Source of the DNA: Lytechinus pictus
Lineage: Eukaryota
Reading direction: 5' to 3'
Assembly: GCF_037042905.1 (NCBI RefSeq)
Contig: NC_087246.1
Span: 12,834,001-12,898,000 of the forward strand
Length of the DNA: 64,000 bases
Positions 42,001 to 59,699 of the stretch are shown piece after piece. Every line of letters begins with the position of its first letter. Positions within the stretch are counted from its first letter, which is position 1. Below the pieces are notes generated by a model. The model was not told the DNA's origin, searched no databases, and saw only the letters and a list, made by a program, of their open reading frames with translations. Both the position numbers and the translations under genes were made by a program.

Positions 42001-45000
42001 AAAAGTTTTACTCTAAGATAGACTCATAAGCATCAATAGCGCTGCTGACACTTGTTTCATTGGAATACAGAAATGCATAAAATGTAACTGGAATCTGATA
42101 GAATTTGGTCAAATTCTTGAGTGCCAGCACAATGGACACAGGCCAATTAAAAATGGGCTTTTATGAGGAGCTTACTTGCGTGGTGTTGACATCAAAGCGA
42201 GCATTGAGAATGGGAAAGGATTCTTGAATAACAAGCTGCAACAGAAGACCATTTAGTTCTGCAAATAACCAATGAAAACAAAATAAAGGAATATTTGCAT
42301 GGAACTATGATGATGGAATTGTGTGAAATGTATGTAAAATGAACATTCCTCAAATCTACACTCGGTAAAATAGATTCCAAGAGACAAGGTATGATAAATA
42401 ATCTGAAAGAAAAAATGTCCATGTCCAAAACATCTCATCGCATACTCACACCAAATCAAATGGAAATTAGACCAACTGGTTCTGGAACAAATAGCTATTA
42501 TACATAGTTTGGGAAATAATTATAATGTAAGGCCACTTTCCTCCTAAGCTCCTATATGGTATGGTCTAATAAATTATTTCTCAAGTTGTATAGAGTAAAC
42601 AATATAGTTATCATATGTCAACAAGGCCATAGGCTATTAAAGAGATATATAATTTTCATGAGAGAAATTCCACATCTGTGAATACAAATTTTACGGAATT
42701 TGACAAGTAGCAAGCATGATGTGTTATATGATGGTAAACTTCTTGCAATGCTCAACAAGTAATTGAGTATATGAATATAAAAAAGGCCCAAGTCCATAGG
42801 AGGTAATTTCAAGAAAATAAAAAAAAACGGATATTTTTTTAATTTGGGCAATTAAAGTATATTTGGCCAAATGATATCAGAGAACATCATGAAACAAATT
42901 TAAGTGTACATGAACATTTATATTCACGTTACTTGCGGGCGGGGAATTTTTTCTGGTGGATTGGGTCATTTTTAGAATCATTCTTACATTCATATACATG
43001 GTAGACTTCTGTAGTAAGTAGTAGAAGTAATGAGAGCGGGCACTATGATATGAATGTAAGAAAAGCCCAAGTCCTGGACTTGGGCTTTTTTTACACTCAT
43101 ACCAGATTTTCCTCCTTTATTTAAGGCATTTCTGAGATGACTTCAGATTTATCATTTATACACAAGATGAGTCATTTTATAAGGAACAATTTCCCATATT
43201 TAACTCAATTTCGCCAAAATTGGACTTGGGCCGTTTTTATATTCAGATACTCAATTCATATTAAGATGATCCATCAGACTTGATGTGCAAACATTATGAC
43301 ATCACAATGGCAGTCCAAATCATAAGCAATGCAGGTGTCACACCAACTCATGCTTGTATCATTTCTATAACTTAAAACATCTGCCGTTTCATCTTATGGG
43401 ATAAACATGGGTACAGATATTGTTGCAATATACAATGGTCATTATGTTTTATAACCATATAATGAATTCGTCTCTGTTTTCACGAAGTGACGGATACAGG
43501 GAAAATCCCATTATTTTTCAATTTCGAGTTATTTGCATTTTTAGACATCTATGACTAAAAAGTTTCAGATCACAAAAATGTCTAATTACGTTGCTATGAC
43601 GACATGACATTCAACAAAATACCGGGTAAAAGGATTTCTTGTTTTCACGAAGTGACGGATATGTACGCACATTCAGCCGTCACTTCGTGGAAATCAACGA
43701 ATGCAGTTGTCGCTGATGTTTTTTTTCACGAAACGACGGATGAGGCCTGGCGCGAAGTCAGTGACAATTCGTCACTTCGTGAAAACCGTCGCCTGACTTT
43801 CGGTGCAAATGATTTGGTTACGAAGTGGCGGGAACGAGTTTCGAACAGCTTAGAATGGTCAGAGATCGTGAAATGGTGAGTTTTTTTTAATATAAGAAAG
43901 TAAAGAAATGTGATGCACCCTTTTAAGTCTTTCTGATTATTTTTAATGACCTTTTCAACCTTTGATTAACGTCTCTGTGCGCAAAAACCTGAATATAATA
44001 CAGTCGCTCTATACATTGTCCCATGTACTTATTTTTTTGTAAGTGAGATTGAGAATGGGGTGAAGGAGACTTCTGCCGTGTCACAAAAAAGAAACACCGT
44101 AACTTATTTTACACTAACAGGAATAAGAACATTTTCAGACACAGATCACGGCTAAAAGTGGATTGAGTTGGGGATTTAGATCTATGACTAATACAGATGA
44201 AATTATATTTCTAAAATAGGCTATTTAGAGTGTCAGTCTTAAAATTAAAAGGCAGGCTCTCGTAATTTGTTCCTCTCACTCAGTCACAGCTCGGACTCTT
44301 CATTCTCTCTCTGCCACAGGAGTGTCACTCTCAAAAAGAGTAGAACTATTAAGAATGAATGATAAGAAGCCCCCCCCCCAAAAAAAAAACAGTCAACATC
44401 TTTAATGTTAGGCCTACTGTAGTGTAACTCTAAAGTATAATTTAATGTGAGGGCCATTTAAAATGTCCAAGCCAGGAGGATGTGCACTAACTCATGAAAA
44501 TTTAGTTTGTTGGCGTTGCTTTTCCCCAGCCTCCTCTCTCTGTTACGAATCTTAAATCAGTGTAGGTGTTGGACGCAAGAGTAAGATTTGTTTAGCCTCA
44601 TTTGCTGGTGACTGGTGTTAGTAAATCAATAACTGTAGAGTCTATGGGAGGAAGAGGCTTGTGTCGGCACAACCAACAGTGACATTCATTTGAAATCGAC
44701 GAGCCTATTTTTTTTACATAGGGCTAGCACCAGGAGCTTCCTATATATTTGTGTTTTATGGGGGGGGGGGGGTCTCCTGTTACGATCCATAGATGATTTA
44801 GAGTGTGATTCAAAATTGAATTAAGAACAATGCATTTTCGCAAGAAAAAAAAAAACAATGGTGTGAAGAAAGAGGTTCGATGCATGCACTTGGGAGGGGG
44901 GTAGTTTGAATGCTGGATTTTTAAGGGCATGTGAACAGAAATACATGAAATAAACATTTTCTCATTTTTTCACTGATTATATCATTGTAGAATGAATGGT

Positions 45001-48000
45001 GGAGTTGTATGTCATATTCAAATTTTTATGACAACCCTTGACTAATCACAAATAATTAAGTTCATTAATCTAGATTGAAAAATCATCGAATTGTTATTAG
45101 AGATTTTGACTTTGGATTATATATTATAAAGGTCTTAAAATTGTGTAATCACTTCAAAGAGCCGTGCAGGCAAGCACCTTATTAGGTGATAAACATGTAA
45201 TATTTTACATAAAATAGAAGAATGTTTTTGAAAAAAAAGTGTACCTCAGGTTTGGTGATTATGATGAAGGTCTTCTTGTGCTTCCATTTCTTTTTCAGAT
45301 ACAGTAGATAAAATTAGCATTTCCATCATATTTCTGCTATTGGTACACAATGCCGCTGGCCAGAGAAAAATGCAGGTAAGAGTTTTCATCATGCAATAAT
45401 TCCACACATTATGACAACCTGTTGGTGTTCTGCCAACCATTGATTCTCCTTTTTCTTCCCATAATTACAGACTGCCGTTGGCATATTATCATATTAGTTT
45501 TTGCTTTTCAAGTGCCCAAATGAAAATTGCCAGTAGAGCTACAAAACCTTTGTGGCTAAAACAAGCTTTAACAAAGCCTCCTTTGCTGAAACTCCTGCTT
45601 AACCACTTGACTGCGTAGCACGTAATATTACGTGCTGGGCGAGCGTACGATCTGTGCGAGGCACGTAATATTACGTGCTTGACCTATCTTCTGTTTGAGG
45701 CGTCAGCACCGCGCTGTTAAAGCCCCTACAATGAAAACAGCGTGTGTATATCAAATTTCTGACTATGGACGCCAGATGGCGCCATTCCAAAAAAGTTATC
45801 AAAACTTTTGCAGTGATTTATAAATGTTTGTATTCACTCTGCCATAGTGAAAGTGTACGACGCTCAGTTCAAAATGGCGACTCGCAGTGGAGAAGTGAAT
45901 CAGAAGGATTTTGAAGAAACTTTTGACAATAGGAGTGATAAATTTAGTGAAAGATCTGGGTCAGAAGGGGAGGATGATTTTATTAATGGATGTTGGAAAT
46001 AGTGATGAGGAAAGTGATGTGATTATTTATAATTTTTTTCCCCCAAGTTGCTGTCGGTTGTAGTCCCAAATAGATCTAACTTGTTAGTCCCATTCAGTAG
46101 CACCAGGGGGGTCAGTGCGCAGTACAGCCTATAGCAGTCAAGTGGTTAAGATACTTGACCTGCTACATTTTGTACATGTATTCTGACTAACTTCTACAAT
46201 TACTATCAATAGTTCATCTGTTACAATAATATTGAATTGTACAGTAACAAGAGAGTATAAATTTAGAGTGTTATCTTTTAGCAGCTAACTTGGACCTGAA
46301 AATGTTTCTGATTTTGCAGGAATGAAATAGGCCTATGTTTAAATGGAATATTTGTTGTAAAAATATGCATGAAATATACTTTTGATATGACAAGCACCAT
46401 ACTCACTGTATGGGCAGGATTTAGTTTGATGGAGTAATTTGAAATATTGAGTCTGCTTTCCAATCTATTGACATGCAAATTTTAACATTGGAAAGCCCCC
46501 CCCCCCTCCCCGAAATAATTTTTTTTTTCAATCATTCTTCTAACTCAGATTGGATCCAGACACTGACATGCAAGTAAGATGGGTAATCGATGGTTCTCTG
46601 AACACCGTCAGAGCTGGGGATGTCACCTGGCATGGCGCCCTAAAAGTTGGTATGATGGTTACGATGGATTGGAAAGGCGTGCCCTGGTATGGGATTGTTC
46701 AGGAAGTTTACCTGGACTCATCTCCTGAGGACTGCGACTCAGACGACGAACCACTGTCTGTGCTTTTGGATAAGTCGAAAGGTATTTCATTCCCTTGTTA
46801 ACGACACTAACTTCAGAACTTATGTTAAGTCCCCTGTGAATTATTTGTGCACTTGATTGATTTGTGCATTTGTGAAATTTCACAGGATAAAAATCCACCA
46901 ATACTTTCGAGCAACAATTTTTTTTAATTTTAAATCCAAAACCATCAGATCAATTTTCGCCAGAGCAAATGTCATGGAGCCATATGTACAGCATAGAATA
47001 TTTCATACCAATTCAGCAACATATTTTAGATAGAGTTATTGCTGCTCAAAATACAAATGAATTGACAATGTCATATGGCCTTTACAGGAGTTTGGGATAA
47101 TCTTCATTGCTTTAATGTTTCGGTTTCTTAGTAAATTAAGTGGAGAATCCTATCATGCAGTATCCTCGATGGTACCCAGTAGGGCTGCCTTTATGCTATG
47201 GGGAAGAGGGGGCAGGGCCTTGCAACTATTGATTGCCATATTCTACCTAAATTTAATATATATTCACCTGTGGTCACCTGACTGCCCCCGTCAGTAACCA
47301 TGGTAGGCCCTTGGGTCCTATAAGGTTCAGCATCTATTTGCATTAAATCCTTAATAAAAAGTGTCAGTGCTACAATGATTACAAGAATTTCTTATAAAGT
47401 TGGTACTTGGACAAATGTTTGAAACATGTTTACAAGGTTCAGTTGAACACACTGTAAGTAAGAAGTGCGTATGTACCCACAGTATAGCAGACTGTGTTGT
47501 GTTTATTGGCTTAAAATACAGCGGTGCAGAAAACATTCCACTTTTTTGTACAATGAGCTAAAAGTAAAAAAAAAATTATAGAACCACTGTGTGCATCTTC
47601 CGTATTTTCATCCCAAATTAGTATTAATATTTTACATGTTTCATCTCTTAAATATATTTTTTCATCAGGAGCTCACAATGTTAGCCAATGCCTTTTAATA
47701 CCACATAACTTTTTATACTCTCAAAACTATGCTCCTTATAATAACTGTTTGGCTCCACATAAATATGACCGTTCTGTGTTTCTGTACATGTGATTAAAAG
47801 TAAACAAATTTTCTCTTTTCTCTAGGCTCCACAAGTGGGAAGTGCACTTTGCAAAGTGAACCACCAGTTCATCCAGCTCAATGTGACAACTTTTTTTGTC
47901 AGAAGGAGGTGTGGGCAGCATGTCATAGATGCCTGTGTTTCTTATGTTTTGAGCATTTTTCTTTAAGTGATGATTGTCTTTCCCACAATGTAGCATTTAA

Positions 48001-51000
48001 TTCTAATAATGTAAATGTTGAACAACTTGGAATTCTAACAGAAACAGGGTCCAAGTATAAAGAGCAGGAAGAGCAAGAGGTAAGACAGAGAATCCCTGGA
48101 GCCATGGTGCAACCTCATGAAGTTCACAGCAGCATGACTCCTCCGGACAACGATGGAATGTCACCCTTGCCTCAGTCAAGTCTCACCAGTACTCAAGAGG
48201 CTGCTGTTCAAGAGATTTCGAAGAGTCCATCTGCAGCCTCTGGTAATGTTGATACCCTGAATCCGAGAGAATGCGTGGGAAGCATTCCAGAAGACATGGC
48301 TCAACCAAGCCTTCCATCTCTGTCTTCTGTTTGTGAAAGTCATCCTTCCTCATCAAGCAGAGAAACCCTAGAAAACTCAAGAGGTAATCCACCCTTACTT
48401 CATTCCAAAGAATGTGAAGGCCAGAGCATTCCAGTAAATGTGTCTGAATCAGCAAACCAACCTCAGGATGTAGATATGGATTGCAGCGTGATAACTCTTC
48501 CCGATGAAATGCTTCAAGTGGATCCAACACCTGTGTTGGAAAGTTGCACCCAAGCTCAACCGGAGACATTTGTTGTAGATGGCTTGCCTGCAGTCCCGAT
48601 TCCAGAAACACCTACAGAATGTAAGAGTAGGAACCTACTCGTGAAAGAGTAACGGAACCGTGGGCAGTGCTACTTCACTGAAAAAAGTAAGAAGTTTGTG
48701 CCCTCTCGCAGACAATCAAGCTTTGATTGTGATTGCTTGAAATGTGATGGAAGAGGCCTTTCTTGTCAGAAGTTTAGCCAAGAAGACAGAATTGCAGTAC
48801 GGAATGCATATTTTGACCTCGGCAATTTACAGGAACAGAGGCATTGGATTGCAAGACATACAGACGTAAAAGGAGAACTTGGGAGGAAGAATCAACGGCT
48901 AAAATATTTCCTGCCAGCTCCACAAGACCAGTTCGCAAGATTTAATGTTTGCCAGATGTTTCTATCGACTCTTGGAATTACAGAGGCAAGTAAGGACTGC
49001 CACCAAGAAGAGGCTTACATGTGGCATCTTACAAGAAGACAGACGTGGGGGCAGACAATCTAAGGAGAAAGATGCCATGCTGCGAGAAGGTGTTGAAGCC
49101 CATATCAAGCGGTTTCCATGTATGGAGTCTCACTATTGCAGGTCAAAGAGTAAGTGCCAGAACCTTTCTGCAGATTTGAATTTGACCATGATGTATGAAA
49201 TGTACAAGCAGCAGCAGGAAGGTATTCTAGCATCATACTCCTTATACAGGCAAGTATTTCAAGACCTGAAGCTCAAGTTTCATAAGCCCAAGAAAGACAC
49301 CTGTAGTCTTTGCGAGACTTATCACCGTGGGACCTCAATGGAAAGGGAAAAAACAAAGATCGGTATCTCAAGCACACAGCTCAAAAGGAGAAAGTAAGAC
49401 AGCTGAAAGAAAGTGCAAAGGGAAGATCAAAAGCAGATGGTACATATGTATCGGCTGTGTTCGATCTTCAGCAAGTTATCTACTTGCCTAAATCAGCAAG
49501 ATCTGAGCTATTTTACAAGAGGCGTCTGAGCAACTTCAACTTCACTATTTTTGAACTTTCTTCCCAGTTTGCCTGTGTTATCTATCTCATGAAGGTATCA
49601 CAAGACGAGGTGCTTGTGAAGTGGCTTCCTACGTCTATAACTACTTGCAAACCCTTGACGAGAAGGGTGTCAAAGAGGTGGAACTATTTGCTGATGGCTG
49701 TGTTGGCCAAAACAAAAACAGCATCATCGCAAGTATGATGCAGTTTTTTGTGGAGCACTCATCCTCTGTCAGAGTTGTCACAATGAACTACTTTGTGACA
49801 AACCATGGACAGTCAGAGGGGGATTCAGTTCATAGTGTCATACAACGTTGTATGGACCGTGTAACTGAAATCATGATCCCAGGACAGTTAGCCAGCATCA
49901 TTCGCATGGCAAGAGTCCAACCTCGCCCATACTTTGTAAATGAAATAACATCAGAGGATATCAGGGACTGGAAGATGCTCGGTCAACAGAGTGGCATTCT
50001 TCGTGTTCGTAAATCACAAGGTGGTCAATGCATGGACTGGACTCAGATCATGGCCCTCCAGTTCACCAAGGACTCTCCAAAGGATATCAAGTTCAAGATG
50101 TCTCATTGTGATGATGTGTTTGATGCCATCACAGTGGGAGGAATCCGCCGAAATGAGGAACATGAAAGAGAACTGCCAGATCCCTTGTATAAGAATGGGC
50201 CACCAAAGGTACCGCAAGCAAAGTACCTTGATCTAGAATCATTGTGTACGGGGAATACTCCTGCTGTTTGGCATCCTGACTACAAACAATTCTACAAAAT
50301 GCTACCCCATTGAATGCAACACATATAGAAATGGCAATTGTGAGTGAGCATCGGGATTATCATCATCATTGCCGTCGTAGTCGTTTTTCATCATGATTAT
50401 CTACATTACTACAACTTATTTTCTTTCATTTTTTTGAATTCATATTTAAATTATTTGTCATGCATTCTGCTCATTTTATGTTTTAAATAATCTTAAGCAA
50501 TCCGTCCTCAGCAAGTGTTTTTATGTTTAATGTATATATCTGATTTATCATCAAAATATTTTTAGTATATTTGTGTTACCATATTGTATTATTATGCCGA
50601 AGAAAAATAAATGAATATAATCAAAGCATGTAATCTTCATTTACTTTGTTACATGTCGGGGTCCAAATGTTTTTTTGTTTCATTTTATCTCATTCTTGTT
50701 TCTTGGTTTCATTTATATTGACTTTTTATTTGGTTTCCTCTAATAATTTTTTTTTCTTTCAGGCAGTCGTGATCAGGATTTATTAGATCACAACACTGAC
50801 TTCTCTGATATCGATCTGTGCGGCACAAAATTACTATTAAGTAAACCTTTCACCATCAAAATTCTTAGTTTTGATTTTCTTATGATTTTGGCTTAGATAT
50901 AAGTCTAGTTTTTATTTTGATTTGATTTTCATTTTTGGTTTCATTTTTCTTACATTTTATTTCAGAGCCATCTATATCAAGAAGTGCCTCAACCATTATT

Positions 51001-54000
51001 GCGGGATGAGAAACTTGAGGAACCTCATTTGTTGTAGTGATCGACGTAATGATTTCGAGAAAGGAAGACTAACTTACAACAGGTCTAATATCCAGGGCCT
51101 TTTTACTGTAATAGAGAACATGTACTCTTACTGGACCATATGACTTCCACATTCTAAATTATCCTTTTTGCAGGACTAAGGTGTATTTGGTTTCATGGAA
51201 TGCTGTACAAAGATACTCATTACTGCAACTCTTGTTTTAGATATATTATTCATATATTGATGAATTTAATTAGTCAATAACTTGAGGATAATTTGATAAT
51301 GAATTAAATGACTTTTCATTAGTACTTCGATTATTGTATTCTATACCTTGTATACTACCGTTTCTGATTCTAATTAAAACATAATTGGTTTGTAGATGAT
51401 TCTGTATGATACAAAATTATATTGATTGAAAACTATAATAATAATTGATGGAAAATGATCCTTTTACATAAATTGGTTAGTTATTAATTGTGTATTGAAT
51501 CATTAGCATGTCTCCTTTAGAAGAGATAAGTGTTTTGCACTGCTAGGTTTCATAGTCTTTGAGACTGTAAAAAGATGAAATAACCTTTAATGTCAGCGGA
51601 ATTTCTGCTGACATTCTTCTCACTAAAGATGCCCAAGAGTGATGATTGAAATAGGCAACGGTGATTATTTTACTTAAATTTCATTTGTTATAAAAGATAT
51701 ACACTCATTTTACAAATGTAAATATCTATGTCAATATTGAATTTAAGAGAATAAAGCGGTTGTGATAATTCGCCAACGGCCAGTATACTTAAAATTACAT
51801 GATTTATTATAACATCTTCATGTAAACATTTCACTTTACATAAAAGTATTGTTCACAATATCATTTTGTTATTCGAGATATGAATTGTGACCTTTCAATT
51901 TTAATGAATGTTACATTGGTGCCCGAAAGTTCTGAGAAGGCAACAGATTGGAGGGGCATGCGATTGTGTGTGATCAAAACTTTTCTGTACCACTGGAAGC
52001 TGATTATTTCAGAATGTTGCAATGTAAAATTTTAATTTATGTATATTTATTTCTTGAATTTGATACTTTTTTGTCAACAAATCTGTATAGCAAAATGCTG
52101 CATTCACATGATACGATTGCCTCTAATCTTAATCAGGATGAAATGTATACTTGTTAGATATTTTCAAGTATTCTACGTAGGATATACAATTACTGAAATA
52201 ATCATATTCAGTTGATGTATTCCAGATTATTCAATTTACATGTAAATTTCACAATACAGCATTGATTATTATTGAGCTAATATTTCAAATGAATTTTCAA
52301 TTTATTGTATTCCAATGTATTTGCCACTAGCTATGCTTGTATCATATGTTATTGAATCCAAAGTGTTCTTAATATATTTCAATTATTATGTAGAGTTTAC
52401 TGAGATGTAGTTGATATCTTTAATGAATTTCTTAAGCATGATTTTTATATGTACAAAGAATCTGATCTTTTTGTCTGTTTTCCACCTCATGTTCTGTTTC
52501 CAAATATTATAAATTAAAAGTGTTCTTCCACATTTAATGTACATTGTAGAGTATTGTTATAATGCTAATATTTCAAATGAAGTTTAAATTTATTGTATTC
52601 CAATGTATTTGCCACTAACTATGCTTGTATCATATGTTATTGAATCCAAAGTGTTCTTAATATATTTCAATTATTATGTAGAGTTTACTGGGATGTAGTT
52701 GATATCTTTAATGAATTTCTTAAGCATGATTTTTTATATGTACAAAGAATCTGATCTTTTTGTCTGTTTTCCACCTCATGTTCTGTTTCCAAATATAAAT
52801 TAAGTGTTCTTCCACATTTATTTTCATCATGTGCATTCTTGAGTATTGTTTATGTACCCAGTATTTTCAATAATTTTCCCAAAAGTCACAACTCTGTAAT
52901 TTTTCATAAAGGAGACATTTCAAAGTGATGTTTTTTCAATTTCTTATGAATTCCAAATATAATTTTTTTCTTTTCAGAATTGATCATATCAAAATGCAAT
53001 AACATTTTTTTTTCATTCTACCCGAATGAAGCCCAGGAACACAGCAGAATGCATGACCATTGTGATTTTAAGGTAAACTTGAGTAGGAGGGGGTTAGGTT
53101 GGGGAGAGGTAGGTGGACGGGGGGTGGAAGGGGAGAGAGAGGAAGAGGATAGAGAGAGGGGGAGGGGTGGGAGGAGAGGGGAAGTGGGTGGTGAGAAAAA
53201 GGGAAGGGTGGAAGGAGAAAGAGAAGGGAAGTGAGTGGAGGGGGAGGGGTAGAAGGAGAAGGGAAGTGGGTGGAGAGAAAGGGGGAGGGGTGGAAGGAGA
53301 GAGAGGGGAAGTGGGTGGAGGGGGAGGGGGTGGAAGGGGAGAGGATTGGGTGGAGGGAGGGGAAGTGGGTGGAGAGAGTGGGAAAGGGGCGGAGAGAGAA
53401 GATTGTAATTTGAAATTTAATTTAATTTTGACAGCTGCTTCAGCAGATCTCTGCTTCGTTCTTTAAAATAATTAATCATCAAGGAATAATACTAAATAGT
53501 CAATTCAGCTTTGACAGAGAATACCTATAGATGGGATTTAAGAAATCTCAATTGTTTATATATATATATTTTTTTTTTTTTGGGGGGGGGCAGTGAGGCA
53601 AGTTAGTCAAAACAAACTGACGCTTGTTGGTGATGTTACTTATTCAATTCCAACGAAGTAAGTGTTCTCGAACGGTATAATTCTACTTTCTCAAACATAA
53701 AATTACAAGGAAGACAATGTGTTACATGTTGACATTATATTCATTTAATCCATAGCCTGATTGACAGATGAGTAGAGATTTCAGTGTCCTCTAAAACGTG
53801 GAGATAAAAAGAAAGTGAAAAAAATGGCCTGATTGACATATATATGAATAGAGATTTCCATATTTCAGTGTCCTCTAAAACGTAGGAGATAAAAAGAAAG
53901 TAATCCCCGGCCCCGTGCGTCTCCACGGTATTCATTGTGAAAATAAAATTATATTTGTACCAAAAGGGGAAAATGTAGGGCTAATTGATCTCACATTTGG

Positions 54001-57000
54001 AATTATTTCGTCTGCAATAGCAATTAAATCAGTTATTTATGATATCTATAGCCTACTTATAGAATTACAACCAAGACTATGCGTGGGACTGAGGCAAAGC
54101 TTCTACCGTCACTTCGTAAAAATAAATTTGCAGCGCGTCCTGAATTTAGGGTTTTCACGAAGTGACGGTTATACGCGCGGAGCACCATCCGTCACTTCGT
54201 GAAAATAAATCTAAGCGCGTCCCGTAAAATATTTTTTTCACAAAAATATGGTTCTGCTTACAGCTCATTATCTTCTTATATTTAAAGAAGATGCAAATGA
54301 TTGGACTTGAACATTGCCTAGAATATGCCCTAAACGATAATATGAAATTTATCCACCCTGCATACTTGAAAGACGTTGAGATTGAGGTCTAAACCTTTGA
54401 AAGCGATTTACTAAAAACTAACTTTTTAAAAGTTGCGCGCTCATCCGTCACTTCGTGAAATAAGGGACGAATTGGCAATGGCTAGAAGATCAAAACTTGA
54501 CCAACAAGAAACTTTCCACCCAATGGTGTGTCTTCTGTAAAGCGATATGGAGAATTAAAAAAAAATGTTGGGATCAATTATACAAGGTGGGATTAAATTA
54601 ATGTTTATTCAATTACATTCTATGCTATCTAGGAATAAAGACTGTCTGTTACAAATACATATATAATAAAAGTGGCATTTCTTCTAACCTTCATATTGTC
54701 CAACTGTAAGTTCACCTCCTGTGTCTGCTTCAGATAACCATTCAGAGATGGTTGTTAGTGCCTCTCTCTGCAGATCTTCATCCATATACCTATGTACAGG
54801 AATAAATTATTAGAAGAAAGCTGTGTTCTGGTAATTTTCATCATGATTTCAGCATTTCAAAAGTTAAGATGATAATGGTCAGTTAAATGATAGCGTGCCA
54901 TATTTATAAAAAATTCCCTCTTTTGTGACAAACTGCGAGTACCACAACAAAATTATGGAACCATTTCTATTAAAAAACATCTATTCCTGTTACATGCCTT
55001 AAGCCCTCAATAGAATTATAATAAAAGATACATACTTTCATACAAATAAGCAAAACCCGACTTCAAATACAATCTGCCAACAAATAAATTCTTAATGGCA
55101 ATGTTTTTTTCTTGTTATAAAAGTGGCACCACAATATAATTTATTCAGTAAGAACTAGTTATGCAAATATAACGATAAAAATAATTAGTTACAATAGGAA
55201 TTACCAAATTATGACCATCTTTACCTTGCAAGTTGAACAGGTTTGGTTTGTGCTTGTTTTCTCAGTTCATCTTCCTGATCTCTTGTAAGGTAACTCAGAC
55301 CTTCATAGAAAAGCTGACAATATGAGAATGAAAAGAACACTAGAACAAAGGGAATTTTCCTCTACAATTCTTCTCTTATCCAAGGAACTCCCTCTCCCAT
55401 CATCTCTTAGTGAAATGACCATTTGGAGCACTTCACTCAACACTCTCATTTTCCATCAGACACTCAAATGCTAACTTTCTCAGGAGCAGTCTGCTCTTCT
55501 GATTTTTTTTAAAGAGAACATTCAATAGTTGGCAAGTTTTCACTTACATGTAGAATATTTCAACTACTTTGTCAGCTGGAATGAAAATGGGTACATGCAT
55601 TGGTGTTAAATCAACATATTTAAACACAACTGATATTGGTGTGAGCAAAATTGGTTTAGAAGCAGCTAAAAATATCAGACATAAAATCAACCTAGTGAGT
55701 GGGTATCGTTCAAGGAACCACTCACGTGTAGATCCAATGTGATGACAATTTATGCACCCACAAACATGTGCAGTTAAGTTTTTTTTTAGTATCATGTGCA
55801 GTTAAGTGTATTTTTAGTATGGAGCTACCCTGGGAATGATCATAGCTTGCACAGACAGTGACGGTTGAAATGTGATCATTTGAAATATCTTATTAAAATG
55901 TCATCTAAAAATGTGGGTGGAATATAATAAGATCTCTTGAGCGATATCCATAGTTTAAGATTGACAATAAGAGACTAGCAATTTTGGAATAGATTTCATC
56001 CAGATTAACATTTAGCAAACACTACTTGATATTAAACTCTAAAGAGATATCCTCGGTGAAATGTTAAAATCTTGTATCTCAAAATTCAAACATATATATA
56101 TAATAGGGTAGTTATGTAAAAGCTTGATTTTAGAGTAATGACATAAATAACAACCTTTTTTAATTTCTAGATCAATGGTTTTAACACGCAGTGATGATAT
56201 GGAACCATACAAATGCTGTGGATTATTATTAATATTCCCCAAGTTGGTATTTGAAACAAAAAATATTTTACCAACAGTCTCAGCACTTTTTCACAAAACA
56301 ATGAACCCATTGACTACTGTATTCCGAAATTTCCAAAGGCTAATTACAGGATCTTCCAGTTCTAGAAGGCAACAAGTTGACAGCGACTTGTAGTTAAGAA
56401 TATGTGCATATTACTTAGCATGTAATATGCAGTAGCACCTGTCACCTGAACATGATGTGGCCAATTTGATGATGTACTATAGCATTGAATGTAGGGATTT
56501 AGGCATGAATTATAGTTCTACTGGAATCTTTGTAAAAAATAAATCATAGAGCTGCCAAATGGGATATTCATCAATTCAGGAAGAATTCACTGAGGACTTT
56601 GGGAAGTCCACTTTCAATCACACAAAATACAATGTAAATCAGTATGTTGATTATTTCTGGTTATTCAATTCAAAATATTGTCAACTTTTCAGAGTCTTTC
56701 TGACAACCAGGGAGATTTGGCAGCTCTGAATTACAAACACTATATTATGTTATATTTGTACATTGTGCCCTCACCTTATTAAAGTTGAAGTTATGTTTGC
56801 AAAGGAATTCGATACTTGATGCCTGAAAATCAGAAAAATCACACAAAAACATGGTCAGCATTAATAATGAAGTGTCATTTCATCTTTAAATAAACCTTTG
56901 CTTTATATTACACCAACAAGTGAAAATATTAAAAGGATACTATCATGATGACTTAACTCCATCTTGCTCTAAAGGTTAACTATTTTCCAAGATGTTTGTA

Positions 57001-59699
57001 ATTTCAGTGTAGATGGGGGTGGGAATCTGACACTCTAGTAAATTATTTATTTATCTTTTAATCCTTAAGATGTGGCATTGGTGTGATTTAGCCAAGGTTA
57101 AATATTTTACCTTTGATGAATATTCATCTGCAACTGATAAAAAGTATTATTAACCGTATCAGACATCTGAGCAGGGCAACTTTGAAACATTGTTGCCTGC
57201 TTAAGACTGGGATCAAATGGCCGGTCAATAAAATTCCAATTGTTTATCCACGGGCCCAATTTATTGCCCGCTCAGGAAAGTCAATGAGAAAATGCGTGGA
57301 AATGTAGCGGGCAATAAAAGGCAGCGCTAATATCCGGGTATTCTACGCGTTTTTGCACGCGTCCTTGAACCGCGCAGTGCTATACGTCATAATGGTAATC
57401 AAGTTAAGACAACGCTGGATACTGCGTCCCTAGGCCAGGGACTCGTCATTTCAATTACGTCACAATGGTAAAGTTCAGAGGCCTAGTCTGCTCAACATGA
57501 TAAACTAGATTCTCATTCTAAAAATTTAAAATATCTAAATTTTAACGATTTTTGCTCTAGATGTCTGATTTGGTTAATAATAGCAATATTGACTGGCCTG
57601 GGGGCGAAAGGACATATATCGCCCTCACTAAATTGATATCACCCTCGTCTACGACTCGGGCGATATAAATCTAGTTTGGGTGATATATGTCGTATCGCCC
57701 CAAGGCCAGTCAATATTGCTTTATTATACCAAGTTACATGTACCTACTGTTGATAATAATAATAATTGGCTTTCATTTTGCACTTTATCAATCTATGACT
57801 GCTCAAAATGCTTCACAATTATTATAACCCTGTCACTGGATTCATAGCTTTTCTGGCAGCCTGTTAGGCGCAAACTTGCTAAACCAACCACAATGACGGT
57901 TGTTTCCTACCGGTACCCAATTAGCACCTGGGTGAGAGTGGCAAAGTGTGGATTGACGCCTTGCTAAAGGACGCTAGGTCATGGTGGGATTTGAACACAT
58001 GACTCTCTGATTACAAGCCGAGAGTCATAACCGCTACACCACGGCGCTGATTGTTATCAGATGGTGCTTGTACAAAACCTATTTGAATTATGAATAAAGT
58101 GGTCAAAGGGTTTAATACCTGGCATGTAAATCTGGAATCCACAGAGGATATACTCCTTGGAAAGAGATAGAAGTTATATGTGTGTGCCTCATACCTAGAC
58201 AAAAAACAAAAGAATACAAAATGAACATCATCAGGGTCCATTTTCAAAAACCTTCACTGGTCTATAGATATCACTTTATAATTGTGTACTGAATTCAATG
58301 AAGTTTACAATCCTAATGAGAATATATGAATATTTCTGCTTGTTTAATCATATTCTTAGATTTAAGGGAATAGCCTGAAGGGCCTGTAACTACAAGCTCT
58401 CCATTACCAAAATCACTAAAAATGTTCACATCTAAATTAAAAAAATCTGTTCAGCTAAGAAATTGCTTCATAGAATTAAGTAAAAAGAGCTCTTACAAGA
58501 GCAGCAGAATATATTCCAAATAAATATCTAGACACTTTACAAATTTGTTTATTATTGCTACCATTCAACTATAAACAAATGTCTACCAATACTACCAAGG
58601 AGGTGTTTTGTAAACCTGTTATTAAGTTACACATAACGACTTACACATCATTTTTACACAAACAGGTTACTTGTTTTAACATGTAATGTAGGTTTCATAT
58701 AAGATTCCCAATCTCTGATTACCATTACAAGGAAAGGTTGACATCAGACATGTTTACATTAAATTCTTGCTGTTAACAAGCATGTGAGTGAAAGTTTATA
58801 ATTTGTCCATTGATAAATTGAGGTTAAAGGAAATTCACTCCCATGATATGAAACAGGGGGAAAAATATGGTATCTCATTAAGGACTAGAACAGAACACCA
58901 GTTGTAGATGACTTGTGATCAGCTGTAGGAAACTACATCCAGTATACATGAACATACTTACTCATTCTTATTTGGTACTTTGACAAATGCAGATATTCCT
59001 TTGAGAACAGAATAGAGAGAGGGAAAATGAAAAGAACAATGTCATGTCACAATTTACAGAGGTTGAGTGTTTTTCATTATTTTGGTAATTCAGTCTTCAG
59101 TCTGATTTTTTTCAAAGAGAAATGATCTCTTCTCATTGTTGTAAAAATCATGCTCTGAAATATTTCTAAAGATCAGTAAATTACACTATCACTGAAGAAA
59201 ATATGATTACTCACTCTCTTTCTTGACTCAAGGCTCCACACTAACTTTTTTTTCTTGGTGGCCCGAATGGTCCAACAAAATTATAAATTTTACATTCTTG
59301 GTGGCCCGCAAGGCAAATTTGGTGGCCCTAAAACAATAGAAAACATTACAATTTTCCAACACTTTGGTAGCCCAATTGGACCACCAAGTGTGGGCTTTTG
59401 CAGAATTTTGGTGGCCCTACTCTCATTTATGGTTGCCCCGGGCCATCGCTAATGTCACGCCCTGTCTGGTACTTATCTCCAATAGGTTTACCCTTTGTTC
59501 TCGCTACCCGCCAGTCCCCCTTCTCTTTTTCACTGCATCTCTCTCTCTCTTTTCCATGTCATTTGCATCTCACCTAGCTGACAGATGGTATACTGCATGG
59601 CCATTCTCCTAAGCTTCTCATATCGCTGAGCTGGGGTGTCAAACAGGCTGTTGATATCATCCTGTGTTGCATGAAGACCAGTGAATTCTGTATCAATGG
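30027..59699 (-). CDS. PNLDC1: PARN-like ribonuclease PNLDC1 (piRNA Trimmer); 20 coding exons recovered, 5'-most coding exon not found
   Basis: Manual splicing gives one open frame of 1532 nt with all GT-AG junctions in phase. Motifs: AIDTEFTGL, SLFDTP..RY, YTICQLGISAF, YNFYLFP, ASSIEFL..HNFNFNK, LGFTEVF..L..SKKPIIGHNLLTDL, FP.VFDTK, HEAGYDAY, VNIIRA..NLSGSDPPSRRP, an RRM-like segment, and a hydrophobic C-terminus (IGLWSALMFSGAICVWAFFG). The tail and SLFD/TICQ motifs favour PNLDC1 over PARN. Confidence 0.9.
30492..30590 (-). CDS. PNLDC1: PNLDC1 observed exon 19 (CKDIMRAFKEHDTLSVVKYSPLHHSKRVRIGLW)
   Basis: cag/gtaagt sites; phase 2 to 2. Confidence 0.88.
31340..31428 (-). CDS. PNLDC1: PNLDC1 observed exon 18 (LAHIFGSYSSVDVQVIDRRHALLAVATFGG)
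   Basis: RRM-like segment; strong acceptor, weak gtgcgc donor; phase 0 to 2. Confidence 0.85.
31767..32751. mobile_element. Tc1/mariner-like MITE in PNLDC1 intron
   Basis: ta|CAGTGCGTATCAAAAAAAAGTTTACACTTTGAAA...TTTCAAAGTTTTAACTTTTTTTATACGCACTG|ta. Confidence 0.85.
32939..33028 (-). CDS. PNLDC1: PNLDC1 observed exon 17 (NLSGSDPPSRRPQWLHVTSKKLTQSLDGVK)
   Basis: N.SG.D...R motif; aag/gtaat sites. Confidence 0.9.
33907..34006 (-). CDS. PNLDC1: PNLDC1 observed exon 16 (VMASRPLDFREYIWKLKDYKDKVNIIRAAVNHV)
   Basis: VN.IRA motif; tag/gtgagt sites. Confidence 0.9.
34207..34548. mobile_element. Two adjacent short palindromic MITEs (34207-34369 and 34371-34548)
   Basis: gggcgtttcatgaa..ttgatgaaacactcccc and ggtgtgtcataaagct..agctttatgaaagacccacc inverted ends. 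Confidence 0.65.
35292..35334 (-). CDS. PNLDC1: PNLDC1 observed exon 15 (FMRLAHYITAKDI)
   Basis: tag/gtaagt sites; phase 1 to 2. Confidence 0.87.
35912..36092. repeat. ~20-bp minisatellite (ACATGGAGAG core)
   Basis: About 9 degenerate tandem units next to the exon 14 donor. Confidence 0.75.
36110..36163 (-). CDS. PNLDC1: PNLDC1 observed exon 14 (DGGVLHEAGYDAYAAGY)
   Basis: HEAGYDAY (DEDDh motif III); cag/gttag sites. Confidence 0.93.
36734..36801 (-). CDS. PNLDC1: PNLDC1 observed exon 13 (KKGTLIVLHSPHIFHGERFHKY)
   Basis: cag/gtaag sites; phase 2 to 1. Confidence 0.85.
36889..37440. mobile_element. Double-foldback non-autonomous element, copy 1
   Basis: ~140-bp palindrome (ttatattggatggct..agccatccaatataa) abutting a second IR pair (attatcatctata..tatagatgataat); copy 2 at 39797-40270. 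Confidence 0.75.
37879..37946 (-). CDS. PNLDC1: PNLDC1 observed exon 12 (NLIDAGLPVQNTSLGCLLENLSS)
   Basis: NTSL motif; cag/gtgagt sites; phase 0 to 2. Confidence 0.85.
38161..38260. repeat. (GAT)n/(ATT)n microsatellite
   Basis: Direct reading. Confidence 0.85.
38324..38409 (-). CDS. PNLDC1: PNLDC1 observed exon 11 (SYSSFKAQLHELFPKVFDTKYLSYEMRK)
   Basis: FP..DTK motif; cag/gtaaag sites. Confidence 0.93.
38447..39265. mobile_element. Tc1/mariner-like MITE with ~300-bp TIRs
   Basis: ta|CAGTGCGTCCCAGAAAAAACGAAACCGAGATTTATCGATG...CATCGATAAATCTCGGTTTCGTTTTTTGTGGGACGCACTG|ta. Confidence 0.9.
39581..39650 (-). CDS. PNLDC1: PNLDC1 observed exon 10 (PIIGHNLLTDLMLFYEKFHRPLP)
   Basis: GHNxxxD motif (DEDD motif II); tag/gtaag sites. 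Confidence 0.93.
39797..40270. mobile_element. Double-foldback non-autonomous element, copy 2
   Basis: Colinear with 36889-37440, with a deletion in the palindrome. Confidence 0.75.
40754..40814 (-). CDS. PNLDC1: PNLDC1 observed exon 9 (IVDKLLGFTEVFRALVESKK)
   Basis: GF..VF motif; tag/gtagg sites; phase 2 to 0. Confidence 0.9.
41205..41312. repeat. (CAT)n microsatellite
   Basis: Direct reading; explains the poly-Ile ORF. Confidence 0.9.
41428..41498 (-). CDS. PNLDC1: PNLDC1 observed exon 8 (LKVKVMAAENRDRLEEDQVKLANR)
   Basis: cag/gtaaag sites; phase 0 to 2. Confidence 0.82.
42176..42258 (-). CDS. PNLDC1: PNLDC1 observed exon 7 (LNGLLLQLVIQESFPILNARFDVNTTQ)
   Basis: cag/gtaagc sites; phase 1 to 0; R3H-like region. 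Confidence 0.82.
42765..43252. mobile_element. Sola-like MITE (488 bp), AATT TSD, GAG termini
   Basis: TIR GAGTATATGAATATAAAAAAGGCCCAAGTCCA vs GAGTATCTGAATATAAAAACGGCCCAAGTCCA; AATT at 42761-64 and 43253-56; internal palindrome of the same motif at ~43047-43103. Confidence 0.8.
45603..46145 (+). mobile_element. piggyBac-like non-autonomous element nested in the Sola1 element
   Basis: TTAA on both sides; TIR CCACTTGACTGC / GCAGTCAAGTGG; two copies of palindrome GCACGTAATATTACGTGC; short acidic ORF remnant from 45874. Confidence 0.8.
46568..50313 (+). pseudogene. Sola1-like DDD transposase, spliced (46568-46781 + 47826-50313, ~900 codons), disrupted
   Basis: Motifs RN.G..Y..K.VP.R, VC..FL.TLGI, D.RG, HI..FP..ESHYCR, F..PKKDTC..C, FDLQQV..LP...FYKRRL..FNFTI, LFADGC.GQNKN, HGQSEGDSVHS.I, K..DL..LC...FY..L. 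In-frame TAA at 48650-52; frameshifts near 48985, 49350 and 49572. Confidence 0.87.
52276..52818 (+). repeat. Tandem duplication (period 288 bp) inside the Sola1 element
   Basis: gctaatatttcaaatgaa at 52276 and 52564, near-identical through gttcttccacattt. Confidence 0.92.
53085..53402 (+). repeat. G/A-rich polypurine low-complexity tract
   Basis: Repeats of GGGGAAGTGGGTGGAG / GGGGAGGGGTGG. Confidence 0.9.
54689..54789 (-). CDS. PNLDC1: PNLDC1 observed exon 6 (YMDEDLQREALTTISEWLSEADTGGELTVGQYE)
   Basis: tag/gttag sites; phase 2 to 1; an in-frame alternative donor (gtgaac) lies 27 nt upstream. Confidence 0.8.
55225..55313 (-). CDS. PNLDC1: PNLDC1 observed exon 5 (LFYEGLSYLTRDQEDELRKQAQTKPVQLAR)
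   Basis: G..YL...QE motif; cag/gtaaag sites; phase 0 to 2. Confidence 0.88.
56547..56728. mobile_element. Short hAT-like MITE
   Basis: AGAGCTGCCAAAT / ATTTGGCAGCTCTG inverted termini; TSD not clear. Confidence 0.55.
56775..56822 (-). CDS. PNLDC1: PNLDC1 observed exon 4 (ASSIEFLCKHNFNFNK)
   Basis: SSI.FL...FDFNK-like motif; cag/gtgag sites. Confidence 0.92.
57145..57727. mobile_element. Double-foldback non-autonomous element, different family, mirror orientation
   Basis: ~30-bp IR (57145-57173 / 57553-57582) abutting a ~150-bp palindrome (57577-57727). Confidence 0.75.
57752..58048 (-). mobile_element. tRNA-derived SINE (same family as 7257-7547)
   Basis: Colinear high similarity; B box mutated (GTTCAAATCC). 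Confidence 0.9.
58119..58194 (-). CDS. PNLDC1: PNLDC1 observed exon 3 (YEAHTYNFYLFPRSISSVDSRFTCQ)
   Basis: NFYLFP motif; tag/gtatt sites; phase 2 to 0. Confidence 0.92.
58962..58998 (-). CDS. PNLDC1: PNLDC1 observed exon 2 (ISAFVKVPNKN)
   Basis: aag acceptor after pyrimidine tract, gtaagt donor; phase 1 to 2. Confidence 0.85.
59229..59464. mobile_element. hAT-like MITE with GGTGGCCC repeats
   Basis: CAAGGCTCCACACTAAC / GCTAATGTCACGCCCTG imperfect termini. Confidence 0.55.
59574..59699 (-). CDS. PNLDC1: PNLDC1 observed exon 1 (AIDTEFTGLHATQDDINSLFDTPAQRYEKLRRMAMQYTICQLG)
   Basis: cag acceptor, gtgag donor; contains DEDD motif I (DxE); phase 1 to 1. Confidence 0.93.
   Translation of the reverse strand, partial: PLIQNSLVFMQHRMISTACLTPQLSDMRSLGEWPCSIPSVS

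What the first reader, a model, noticed from the sequence alone, without database searches (positions are those of the whole stretch)
43465..54473. 11-kb Sola1-type transposon with intact ends sits antisense inside the piRNA-trimmer gene PNLDC1
Seen: AATT-flanked, TIR-bounded element of 11,001 bp in intron 42259-54688. Removing it and the neighbouring MITE leaves ~930 bp, similar to the gene's other introns. The transposase is on +, the host gene on -. Known: PNLDC1 trims pre-piRNA 3' ends in the germline; Sola1 elements make 4-bp AWWT TSDs. Inference: each PNLDC1 pre-mRNA would carry ~11 kb of antisense transposon RNA in the cells that make piRNAs, so the locus could act as a self-targeting trap. 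Alternatively the insertion could dampen a TE-defence gene through convergent transcription or heterochromatin.
Basis: partly seen in the sequence, partly recalled or inferred. Interest (0 to 1): 0.78.

Follow-up and report, generated by a model that had tools for sequence, protein, structure and literature searches.

The report
Dead Sola1 transposon in PNLDC1-like intron
An 11-kb cut-and-paste transposon of the Sola1 kind really does sit backwards inside an intron of a PARN-like (probably PNLDC1) gene, but its transposase gene is broken, the intron is spliced out cleanly, and nothing shows that it is more than an ordinary intronic passenger.

Summary
The element is 43469-54469 (11,001 bp), with 27-nt inverted ends, AATT duplicated on both sides, and nine copies of a 15-mer in its subterminal regions. 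Twelve full-length relatives in the same genome share these termini. Each has its own matching 4-bp duplication (AATT x9, ATAT x2, AAGT x1), which is the AWWT/AWDT hallmark of Sola1.

The transposase (DDD triad, RNase H-like fold, Pfam DUF7869 only) lies on the + strand. It is broken by one in-frame stop and three frameshifts. The relatives are 5.4-kb non-coding derivatives; one pair is 99.6% identical.

The host gene on the - strand is a PARN paralogue. It lacks the PARN RRM and has a candidate C-terminal membrane helix, so it is PNLDC1-like (about 0.8).

Stranded RNA reads join exon 54689 directly to exon 42258. They give no coverage over the 48900-54469 part of the element that was laid, on either strand.

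The piRNA-trap and gene-dampening ideas remain untested speculation: no small-RNA or same-species DNA runs were available.

Verdict: a new member of a known kind, of low interest. The scan had noted this only on this same stretch, not on other DNA.

The parts
43465..43468 (.). Left copy of the 4-bp target-site duplication AATT
   Evidence: The same 4 bp recur at 54470-54473. Relatives show AATT, ATAT or AAGT pairs.
43469..43495 (+). 5' terminal inverted repeat (27 nt). Position 5 carries a substitution private to this copy (T where the relatives have C).
43469..43790 (.). 5' subterminal region with 5 copies (both orientations) of the 15-mer TTCACGAAGTGACGG, presumed transposase-binding sites
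   Evidence: 9 copies in the window, all near the ends; 0.04 expected
45600..46149 (.). Nested ~550-bp MITE with 12-nt inverted ends, flanked by TTAA on both sides. It inserted into the Sola1 element later.
   Evidence: at least 40 genomic copies, 86-99% identical; sequence of the ends
46568..46757 (+). Probable first exon of the transposase gene (small beta-rich, Tudor/chromo-like N-terminal module). Coordinates are approximate.
   Evidence: weak tblastn match to residues 1-77 of homologue P0002, E 0.01; open frame, donor site
47826..50313 (+). Main transposase exon: Cys-rich finger, helix-turn-helix-like region and DDD catalytic domain. It is colinear with 700-790-aa homologues but broken.
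48650..48652 (+). In-frame TAA stop inside the conserved region
   Evidence: A paralogous fragment (L037) has a sense codon here.
48981..48985 (+). Frameshift 1, not at a homopolymer
   Evidence: L037 reads through in one frame.
49355..49361 (+). Frameshift 2, next to a run of six A
49549..49576 (+). Frameshift 3, near a run of five T
53121..53398 (.). G-rich tandem repeat (41/82-bp period) inside the 3' non-coding part
54106..54469 (.). 3' subterminal region with 4 copies of the 15-mer, ending in the 27-nt 3' TIR (54443-54469)
   Evidence: This end is 88-92% identical to about 19 relatives, which end at or within a few bases of 54469.
54470..54473 (.). Right copy of the target-site duplication AATT
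42259..54688 (-). Host intron (12,430 nt) that contains the element and a neighbouring MITE
   Evidence: 38 junction reads; GT...AG
54689..54789 (-). Host exon upstream of the intron. Reads lie on to 54791 because the last two letters of the preceding exon equal the acceptor AG.
42176..42258 (-). Host exon downstream of the intron (degenerate R3H-like stretch)
42761..43256 (.). Neighbouring 496-bp MITE with 36-nt inverted ends, in the same intron but not part of the Sola1 element

Best explanation
This is a decayed, once-autonomous DNA transposon of the Sola1 kind.

Insertion. A DDD (RNase H-fold) transposase, recognising the 27-nt terminal repeats and the reiterated subterminal 15-mers, inserted it by cut-and-paste into an AATT site and duplicated those four bases. 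The site was in an intron of a PARN-paralogous gene of PNLDC1 architecture, in the orientation opposite to the gene.

Later events. The element then picked up a nested TTAA-flanked MITE. Its transposase gene acquired one stop codon and three frameshifts.

Present state. The host spliceosome removes the whole 12.4-kb intron precisely, so the element is a tolerated, probably neutral passenger.

Family. It is the only copy in the assembly that carries the transposase belonging to these ends. About twenty 5.4-kb non-coding relatives share the ends and were mobilised in trans, some recently.

Shown: boundaries, duplication, family, broken frame, fold, splicing. Inferred: the binding role of the 15-mers, neutrality, and the PNLDC1 identity of the host.
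For: Ends and duplication.

Sola1 signature. A 4-bp AWWT/AWDT duplication is called the hallmark of Sola1 in PMC3845634. Sola elements have a DDD transposase, 4-bp duplications and sizes of 2 to more than 15 kb (PMC10741241).

Transposase.
- 2,038 homologues at E<=0.001. The full-length ones (about 700-800 aa) end where this frame ends.
- The alignment to them is colinear across the frame changes, with no missing residues, so these are frameshifts and not introns.
- D / DxCxGQNxN / HxQxxxDxxH is invariant or nearly so across 15 sequences.
- The AlphaFold model has pLDDT 90. Its best structural matches are integrase cores and Mos1/SETMAR transposase domains, at Z 9.5-10.2.

Lesions private to this copy.

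Relatives. They have no transposase and no ORF of 80 aa or more. One pair is 99.6% identical with different duplications.

Splicing and RNA coverage. Splicing is exact, and there is no RNA over 48900-54469.

Host gene.
- CAF1 Pfam hit in the window.
- The best solved relatives are PARN.
- Five exons are colinear with the C10 PARN locus at 36-61% identity.
- The PARN RRM family is found only at C10.
- There is a candidate terminal exon with a 19-residue hydrophobic stretch, mean Kyte-Doolittle 1.89.
Against: - No reference Sola1 transposase could be compared. Pfam gives only DUF7869, at or just below its cut-off.
- No same-species DNA reads were available. Two of the frameshifts lie next to short homopolymers, so they could be assembly errors; the stop and frameshift 1 are not of that type.
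- The tissue of the RNA runs is unknown, and only about 6% of each run was read. Low or gonad-specific transcription and small RNAs are not excluded.
- One RNA data set (X1) has contigs running from the exon through the intron into the last 870 nt of the element. Some unspliced host RNA carrying antisense element sequence therefore exists.
- PNLDC1 identity rests on architecture. The membrane-helix exon is not linked to the gene by reads.
- Near-identical non-autonomous copies imply a working transposase recently, and this broken copy cannot supply it now.
Confidence: 0.8

Rival explanations
1. Self-targeting trap. Host pre-mRNA, made where piRNAs are made, carries 11 kb of antisense Sola1 sequence and is processed into piRNAs that silence this transposon family.
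For: - The orientation is antisense, and the host is a PARN paralogue of PNLDC1 architecture.
- X1 RNA contigs run from the exon into the element's 3' 870 nt, so unspliced RNA with antisense element sequence exists.
Against: - Two stranded total-RNA runs show no reads over 48900-54469 at exon depth 17-20.
- The X1 contigs stop at a genomic A13 tract on the - strand, which is typical of internal oligo-dT priming.
- Introns are not a known regular piRNA source (own knowledge).
- No other transposase of this family, intact or closely related, was found in the assembly as a target.
- No small-RNA data were found.
- The coincidence of an 'interesting gene' with a transposon is expected somewhere in an 812-Mb repeat-rich genome.
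Confidence: 0.04
2. The insertion lowers or alters host-gene output. It would do so through convergent transcription, heterochromatin spreading, or premature 3'-end formation inside the element.
For: - X1 contigs cover the exon, the intron and the element down to 53596 at a depth similar to the exon.
- An AATAAG lies about 55 nt upstream of the A-tract on the - strand.
Against: - Exon-exon junction reads across the intron are plentiful (38 in about 6% of two runs).
- Those random-primed runs show no intronic or transposase-strand reads.
- The transposase is not detectably transcribed, so there is nothing to converge with.
- The A13 tract explains the X1 pattern as a priming artefact.
Confidence: 0.06
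3. The copy, or an allele of it, is still the working autonomous source of the family. The four lesions would then be assembly errors or private to the sequenced haplotype, and it would drive the recent movement of the 5.4-kb relatives.
For: - It is the only locus that joins these termini to a transposase.
- The catalytic residues are all still present in the broken frames.
- Two frameshifts abut homopolymers.
- The relatives include a 99.6% identical pair with different duplications.
Against: - The stop codon is a substitution and frameshift 1 is not at a homopolymer. Four independent errors in 2.4 kb of a chromosome-scale assembly are unlikely.
- There are no transposase-strand RNA reads.
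- A MITE is nested upstream of the first exon.
- The 5' 272 nt are only 76-81% identical to the relatives, so this lineage split from theirs long ago.
Confidence: 0.1

Closest known systems
Sola1 DNA transposons (Sola superfamily; Bao, Jurka & Kapitonov 2009, as cited in PMC3845634 and PMC10741241)
   Same: - 4-bp target duplication with AWWT/AWDT preference.
- Terminal inverted repeats.
- DDD transposase on an RNase H fold.
- Large size.
- Non-autonomous derivatives that share the ends.
- The terminal motif loosely resembles the published insect Sola1_NA end (TTTT..AAGTG), a weak, by-eye comparison.
   Different: - No reference Sola1 protein could be aligned here.
- At 11 kb, this copy is about twice the mean length reported for bivalve Sola1 elements (5,445 bp, PMC10294476).
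- Part of the length is a nested MITE and a satellite.
- The N-terminus carries a small Tudor/chromo-like module and a Cys finger.
PNLDC1 / Trimmer (pre-piRNA 3' trimming exonuclease; architecture as in PMC5062988)
   Same: - PARN-type CAF1 nuclease.
- A PARN paralogue lacking a recognisable PARN RRM.
- A candidate C-terminal transmembrane helix.
   Different: - Orthology is not shown by a tree or by a named homologue.
- The helix exon is not joined to the gene by reads.
- Function was not tested.
piRNA-cluster 'trap' loci (for example uni-strand clusters such as flamenco; own knowledge)
   Same: Transposon sequence is transcribed antisense as part of a longer host-driven transcript.
   Different: - This is a single element in a spliced intron of a protein-coding gene, not a dense graveyard of fragments.
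- There is no small-RNA evidence.
- The intron is efficiently removed.
Ordinary intronic transposon insertions
   Same: It is antisense to the host gene, spliced out with the intron, decays in place, and is itself a landing pad for later MITEs.
   Different: Nothing found here sets it apart, apart from the identity of the host gene.

Membership tests
Sola1 transposon | 4-bp target-site duplication with AWWT (AWDT) consensus | tested here: met
   The window has AATT on both sides. Twelve complete relatives have matching pairs: AATT x9, ATAT x2, AAGT x1. Of the 20 related 5' flanks fetched, 13 are AATT. The hallmark is as stated in PMC3845634.
Sola1 transposon | Terminal inverted repeats bounding the element | tested here: met
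   24 of 27 positions are complementary. The termini are shared by about 20 relatives.
Sola1 transposon | DDD transposase with an RNase H-like catalytic core | tested here: met
   D43, D120 and D163 are conserved in alignment A1. In the model they sit on beta1, just after beta4, and at the start of the helix after beta5 (pLDDT 90). Z is 9.5-10.2 to integrase and mariner catalytic cores.
Sola1 transposon | Transposase groups with reference Sola1 transposases rather than Sola2, Sola3 or other superfamilies | not testable with these tools
   No Repbase or Bao 2009 sequences are held, and those papers are not in the library. Pfam gives only DUF7869.
Sola1 transposon | Not a member of the other superfamilies with 4-bp or TTAA duplications (piggyBac, Ginger/integrase; Kolobok has no Pfam model and was not assessed) | tested here: met
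   There were no Pfam hits to DDE_Tnp_1_7, rve or other transposase catalytic families, at E<=1 for the window pieces and E<=0.1 for five full-length homologues. The observed targets are not TTAA.
Autonomous (active) element | Uninterrupted transposase reading frame | tested here: not met
   One in-frame stop and three frameshifts, measured against colinear homologues.
PNLDC1 | PARN-type CAF1 (DEDD) nuclease domain | tested here: met
   PF04857 hit at window 59539-59730. The best solved relatives are PARN 3d45 and 2a1r. Exons are colinear with the PARN locus on C10.
PNLDC1 | Lacks the full PARN RNA-binding RRM and the C-terminal domain | tested here: met
   PF08675 has a single genomic hit, at C10:31603876, downstream of the other PARN-like locus. 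There is none in this window.
PNLDC1 | C-terminal transmembrane helix | tested here: inconclusive
   A candidate exon at 31231-31428 has a strong acceptor in the right phase and a 19-residue stretch with mean hydropathy 1.89, followed by a stop. No read joins it to the gene.
PNLDC1 | Orthology to characterised PNLDC1 (tree or reciprocal best hit) | not testable with these tools
   The exons are too short for the length-filtered protein search. A search with the longest exon frame found nothing.
piRNA source locus | Small RNAs of piRNA size with 1U bias and strand asymmetry mapping to the locus | not testable with these tools
   No small-RNA run was offered. The long-RNA runs show no coverage of the laid part of the element, 48900-54469.

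The most novel reading that the evidence does not exclude
The trimmer-like gene's own pre-mRNA, carrying the whole Sola1 element in antisense, is fed into piRNA biogenesis in germ cells. On this reading, a piRNA-pathway gene doubles as the trap that silences this transposon family, and that helped to kill its last autonomous copy.
Probability: 0.04. Interest if true: 0.7.

Novelty: new member of a known kind. Interest (0 to 1): 0.22.

Why it matters
As found, it matters little. It is a well-delimited example of a rare transposon superfamily, Sola1, with a clear pairing of one autonomous copy and about twenty large non-autonomous derivatives. It also gives a working annotation for Pfam DUF7869, as the catalytic core of a DDD transposase tied to AWWT duplications.

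The recent mobility of the non-coding relatives hints that a working Sola1 transposase exists, or existed very recently, in this species. To my knowledge no Sola element has been shown active experimentally, so this would interest transposon biologists.

The link to piRNA biology is only positional.

Tried and rejected
- Introns as the cause of the frame changes: rejected. Homologue alignments are continuous across each switch.
- AATT as part of the inverted repeat rather than a duplication: rejected. Relatives with the same termini carry ATAT or AAGT instead.
- The 5.4-kb relatives as autonomous copies: rejected. They have no transposase similarity and no ORF of 80 aa or more.
- Other transposase loci as the source: every clear relative (E below 1e-15, up to 52% identity) carries stop codons; a few weaker short matches (26-49%) show none.
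- Empty allele and verification of the lesions by reads: not possible. The best holders had at most 14% of the words and turned out to be RNA contigs or other species.
- Naming the host gene through a protein search with the longest exon frame: no hit.
- The ESM Atlas look-up gave only 'CAF1 family'.
- The Bao 2009 and Yuan & Wessler 2011 papers are not held, and no paper mentions DUF7869.
- TOE1 or CNOT7 identity for the host: unlikely. The exons are colinear with PARN, there is an R3H-position insertion, and the C20 locus carries the CNOT7-type motif.
Full report
**Observation**

The stretch is as described. AATT stands at 43465-43468 and again at 54470-54473, and the 11,001 bp between them (43469-54469) end in inverted repeats that match at 24 of 27 positions. 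A 15-mer, TTCACGAAGTGACGG, occurs nine times in the window with up to two mismatches. All nine lie within about 320 nt (5' side) or 365 nt (3' side) of the two ends, in both orientations. Shuffles give 0.04, and none of 100 reached nine. This is the usual layout of reiterated transposase-binding sites, although binding itself is inferred.

**Boundaries tested by paralogues**

No empty allele could be examined, but the genome supplies a better control.
- The first 272 nt of the element match about 22 other places at 70-81% identity. All 20 that were fetched begin at or within two bases of the same nucleotide, 18 of them exactly.
- The last 420 nt match about 19 places at 88-92% identity, and these end at 54469 or within a few bases of it.
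- Pairing the two sets gives complete elements of about 5.0-5.7 kb, plus a few longer ones.
- In twelve of them the termini are identical (CGTCCCTG...GGGACG). Each is flanked by its own matching 4-bp duplication in otherwise unrelated sequence: AATT nine times, ATAT twice, AAGT once.

AATT is therefore a target-site duplication and not part of the repeat, and the target preference is AWWT/AWDT.

**What the element encodes**

Open frames on the + strand between 47849 and 50313 fall into four overlapping pieces in different frames. A HMMER scan of 1.8 billion representatives with the last piece found 2,038 relatives. The full-length ones have about 700-800 residues and end where this frame ends. 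The named ones are uncharacterised multi-copy proteins of a limpet and a sea urchin.

Aligning six of them back to the window shows one colinear gene, with the following lesions:
- an in-frame TAA at 48650-48652;
- a frame change near 48983, not at a homopolymer;
- a frame change near 49355, next to six A;
- a frame change in 49549-49576, near five T.

The alignments are continuous across each switch, so these are frameshifts and not introns. A 77%-identical fragment elsewhere on the same chromosome reads through the first frameshift site and has a sense codon at the stop position, so these lesions are private to this copy.

A weakly matching first exon (about 46568-46757) and an acceptor at 47825 indicate one genuine intron. 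This agrees with another note on this window (s1-329247).

**Kind of transposase**

Pfam gives only DUF7869, at or just under its cut-off. It gives no hit to piggyBac, integrase or any other transposase catalytic family, either for the window's pieces or for five full-length homologues.

Fifteen aligned sequences share a nearly invariant FDLQQ aspartate, an invariant DxCxGQNxN, and an invariant HxQxxxDxxH. The window copy keeps all of them in its broken frames.

An AlphaFold model of the homologous catalytic region is confident (pLDDT 90, pTM 0.89) and has the beta1-beta2-beta3-alpha-beta4-alpha-beta5-alpha order of the RNase H fold. The three aspartates sit at the canonical positions. Foldseek finds only RNase H-like proteins, and weakly. 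The second-look aligner gives Z 9.5-10.2 to retroviral integrase cores and to Mos1/SETMAR transposase domains, over 127-171 residues.

A DDD transposase with 4-bp AWWT duplications is what the literature describes for Sola, and specifically for Sola1 (PMC10741241; PMC3845634). I could not align a reference Sola1 protein, so membership rests on the target signature, the DDD core and the exclusion of alternatives.

**The family**

The 5.4-kb relatives contain no transposase similarity and no open frame of 80 residues. They share with the window copy only the ends and patches of non-coding sequence.

A DNA search with the transposase region finds only this copy and one fragment. A protein search finds a handful of more distant loci; every clear relative among them (E below 1e-15, up to 52% identity) carries stop codons, and a few weaker short matches show none.

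Yet the non-coding relatives include clusters at 98-99% identity and one pair at 99.6% with different duplications. They were therefore mobilised recently, by a transposase that this assembly does not show in working form. This is the most interesting loose end. The window copy is the only candidate partner, but it is broken, and its 5' end is only 76-81% identical to theirs.

**Other contents**

- A 550-bp MITE with TTAA on both sides is nested at 45600-46149. It has at least 40 copies, up to 99% identical.
- A G-rich tandem repeat lies at 53121-53398.
- A separate 496-bp MITE (42761-43256, at least 40 copies at 77-88% identity) lies in the same intron.

**The host gene**

Minus-strand exons encode a CAF1/PARN-type nuclease.
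- There is a Pfam CAF1 hit in the window.
- The best solved relatives of the first catalytic exon are mouse and human PARN.
- Five exons are colinear with a second PARN-like locus on C10, at 36-61% identity.
- The PARN-specific RRM family has its only genomic hit at that C10 locus. C10 is therefore PARN, and the window gene is its RRM-less paralogue.
- A candidate last exon (31231-31428) has a strong acceptor in the right phase and encodes a 19-residue stretch of mean hydropathy 1.89 before a stop. This would match the C-terminal membrane helix described for PNLDC1 (PMC5062988).
- No read links that exon to the gene, and a protein search with the longest exon frame returned nothing.

I put PNLDC1 identity at about 0.8.

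**RNA evidence**

Two stranded, rRNA-depleted runs of the same species label were laid on 48900-54850.
- Reads cover only the exon, at depth 17-20, with the first mate on +, so the RNA is on the - strand.
- 38 reads carry at 54689 a loose end identical to the reverse complement of 42229-42258, and 63 carry at the other side the end of the upstream exon. The 12,430-nt intron is therefore removed exactly.
- No read lies on the laid part of the element (48900-54469), on either strand.

A third data set (X1) proves to be RNA, because it holds spliced contigs. It has contigs running continuously from the exon through the intron into the element down to 53596. There the - strand has C9A13, which most simply points to internal oligo-dT priming on pre-mRNA.

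A DNA data set of another species shows depth of about 10,000 on 54399-54460, so the terminal motif is highly amplified there.

No DNA run of the same species and no small-RNA run was offered.

**Interpretation**

The element is a dead autonomous Sola1-type transposon in a tolerated intronic position.
- The intron is spliced out cleanly.
- The transposase strand is silent in the data available.
- The family has no living transposase in the assembly to be defended against.
- An antisense intronic transposon is the default outcome of selection against sense-strand insertions.

Another agent's note calls this genome a sea urchin. I did not test that.

Noticed in passing
L021-L032 (e.g. G000:C17:10287591-10293059, C8:6914369-6919795, C6:10650122-10655539): A family of about 5.4-kb non-coding elements shares this element's ends. 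Several copies are 98-99% identical, and one pair is 99.6% identical with different target duplications. No intact matching transposase was found anywhere in the assembly, so the source of the recent mobilisation is unexplained.
   Followed up: partly
window 45600-46149: A nested ~550-bp MITE with 12-nt inverted ends and TTAA on both sides has at least 40 genomic copies, up to 99% identical. This is a young, probably piggyBac- or Kolobok-type family.
   Followed up: partly
window 42761-43256: The neighbouring 496-bp MITE is also bounded by AATT on both sides, and it has an internal palindrome resembling its own ends. Whether AATT is its duplication (another AWWT-targeting family) or part of its repeat was not resolved.
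   Followed up: partly
window 54399-54460, run X4 (organism B): DNA contigs of a different species pile up to depth of about 10,000 on the subterminal motif just inside the 3' end. Elements with this motif are hugely amplified in that species.
   Followed up: no
window 53596-54718, run X1: RNA contigs run unbroken from the host exon through the intron into the element, and stop at a genomic C9A13 tract on the - strand. This is probably internal priming, but a real alternative 3' end was not excluded.
   Followed up: partly
L016 (G000:C26:32199-37459) and L017/L028 (G000:C13:29981364-29986621): Two copies of the 5.4-kb element have identical left flanks on different contigs. This is likely a haplotig or a recent segmental duplication rather than two insertions.
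   Followed up: no
G000:C10:31570190-31604037 and G000:C20:8843425-8843559: The C10 locus is the genuine PARN, with CAF1 exons plus the PARN RRM. The C20 locus carries the CNOT7-type motif around 'IYDVKYL'.
   Followed up: partly
window 53121-53398: The G-rich 41/82-bp tandem repeat inside the element resembles longer arrays elsewhere (e.g. C14:16.98 Mb, C12:11.43 Mb, C9:20.85 Mb).
   Followed up: no
Pfam PF25273 (DUF7869): This 'domain of unknown function' covers the second and third catalytic aspartates of a DDD transposase tied here to TIRs and AWWT duplications. It could be annotated as a Sola1-type transposase core.
   Followed up: partly
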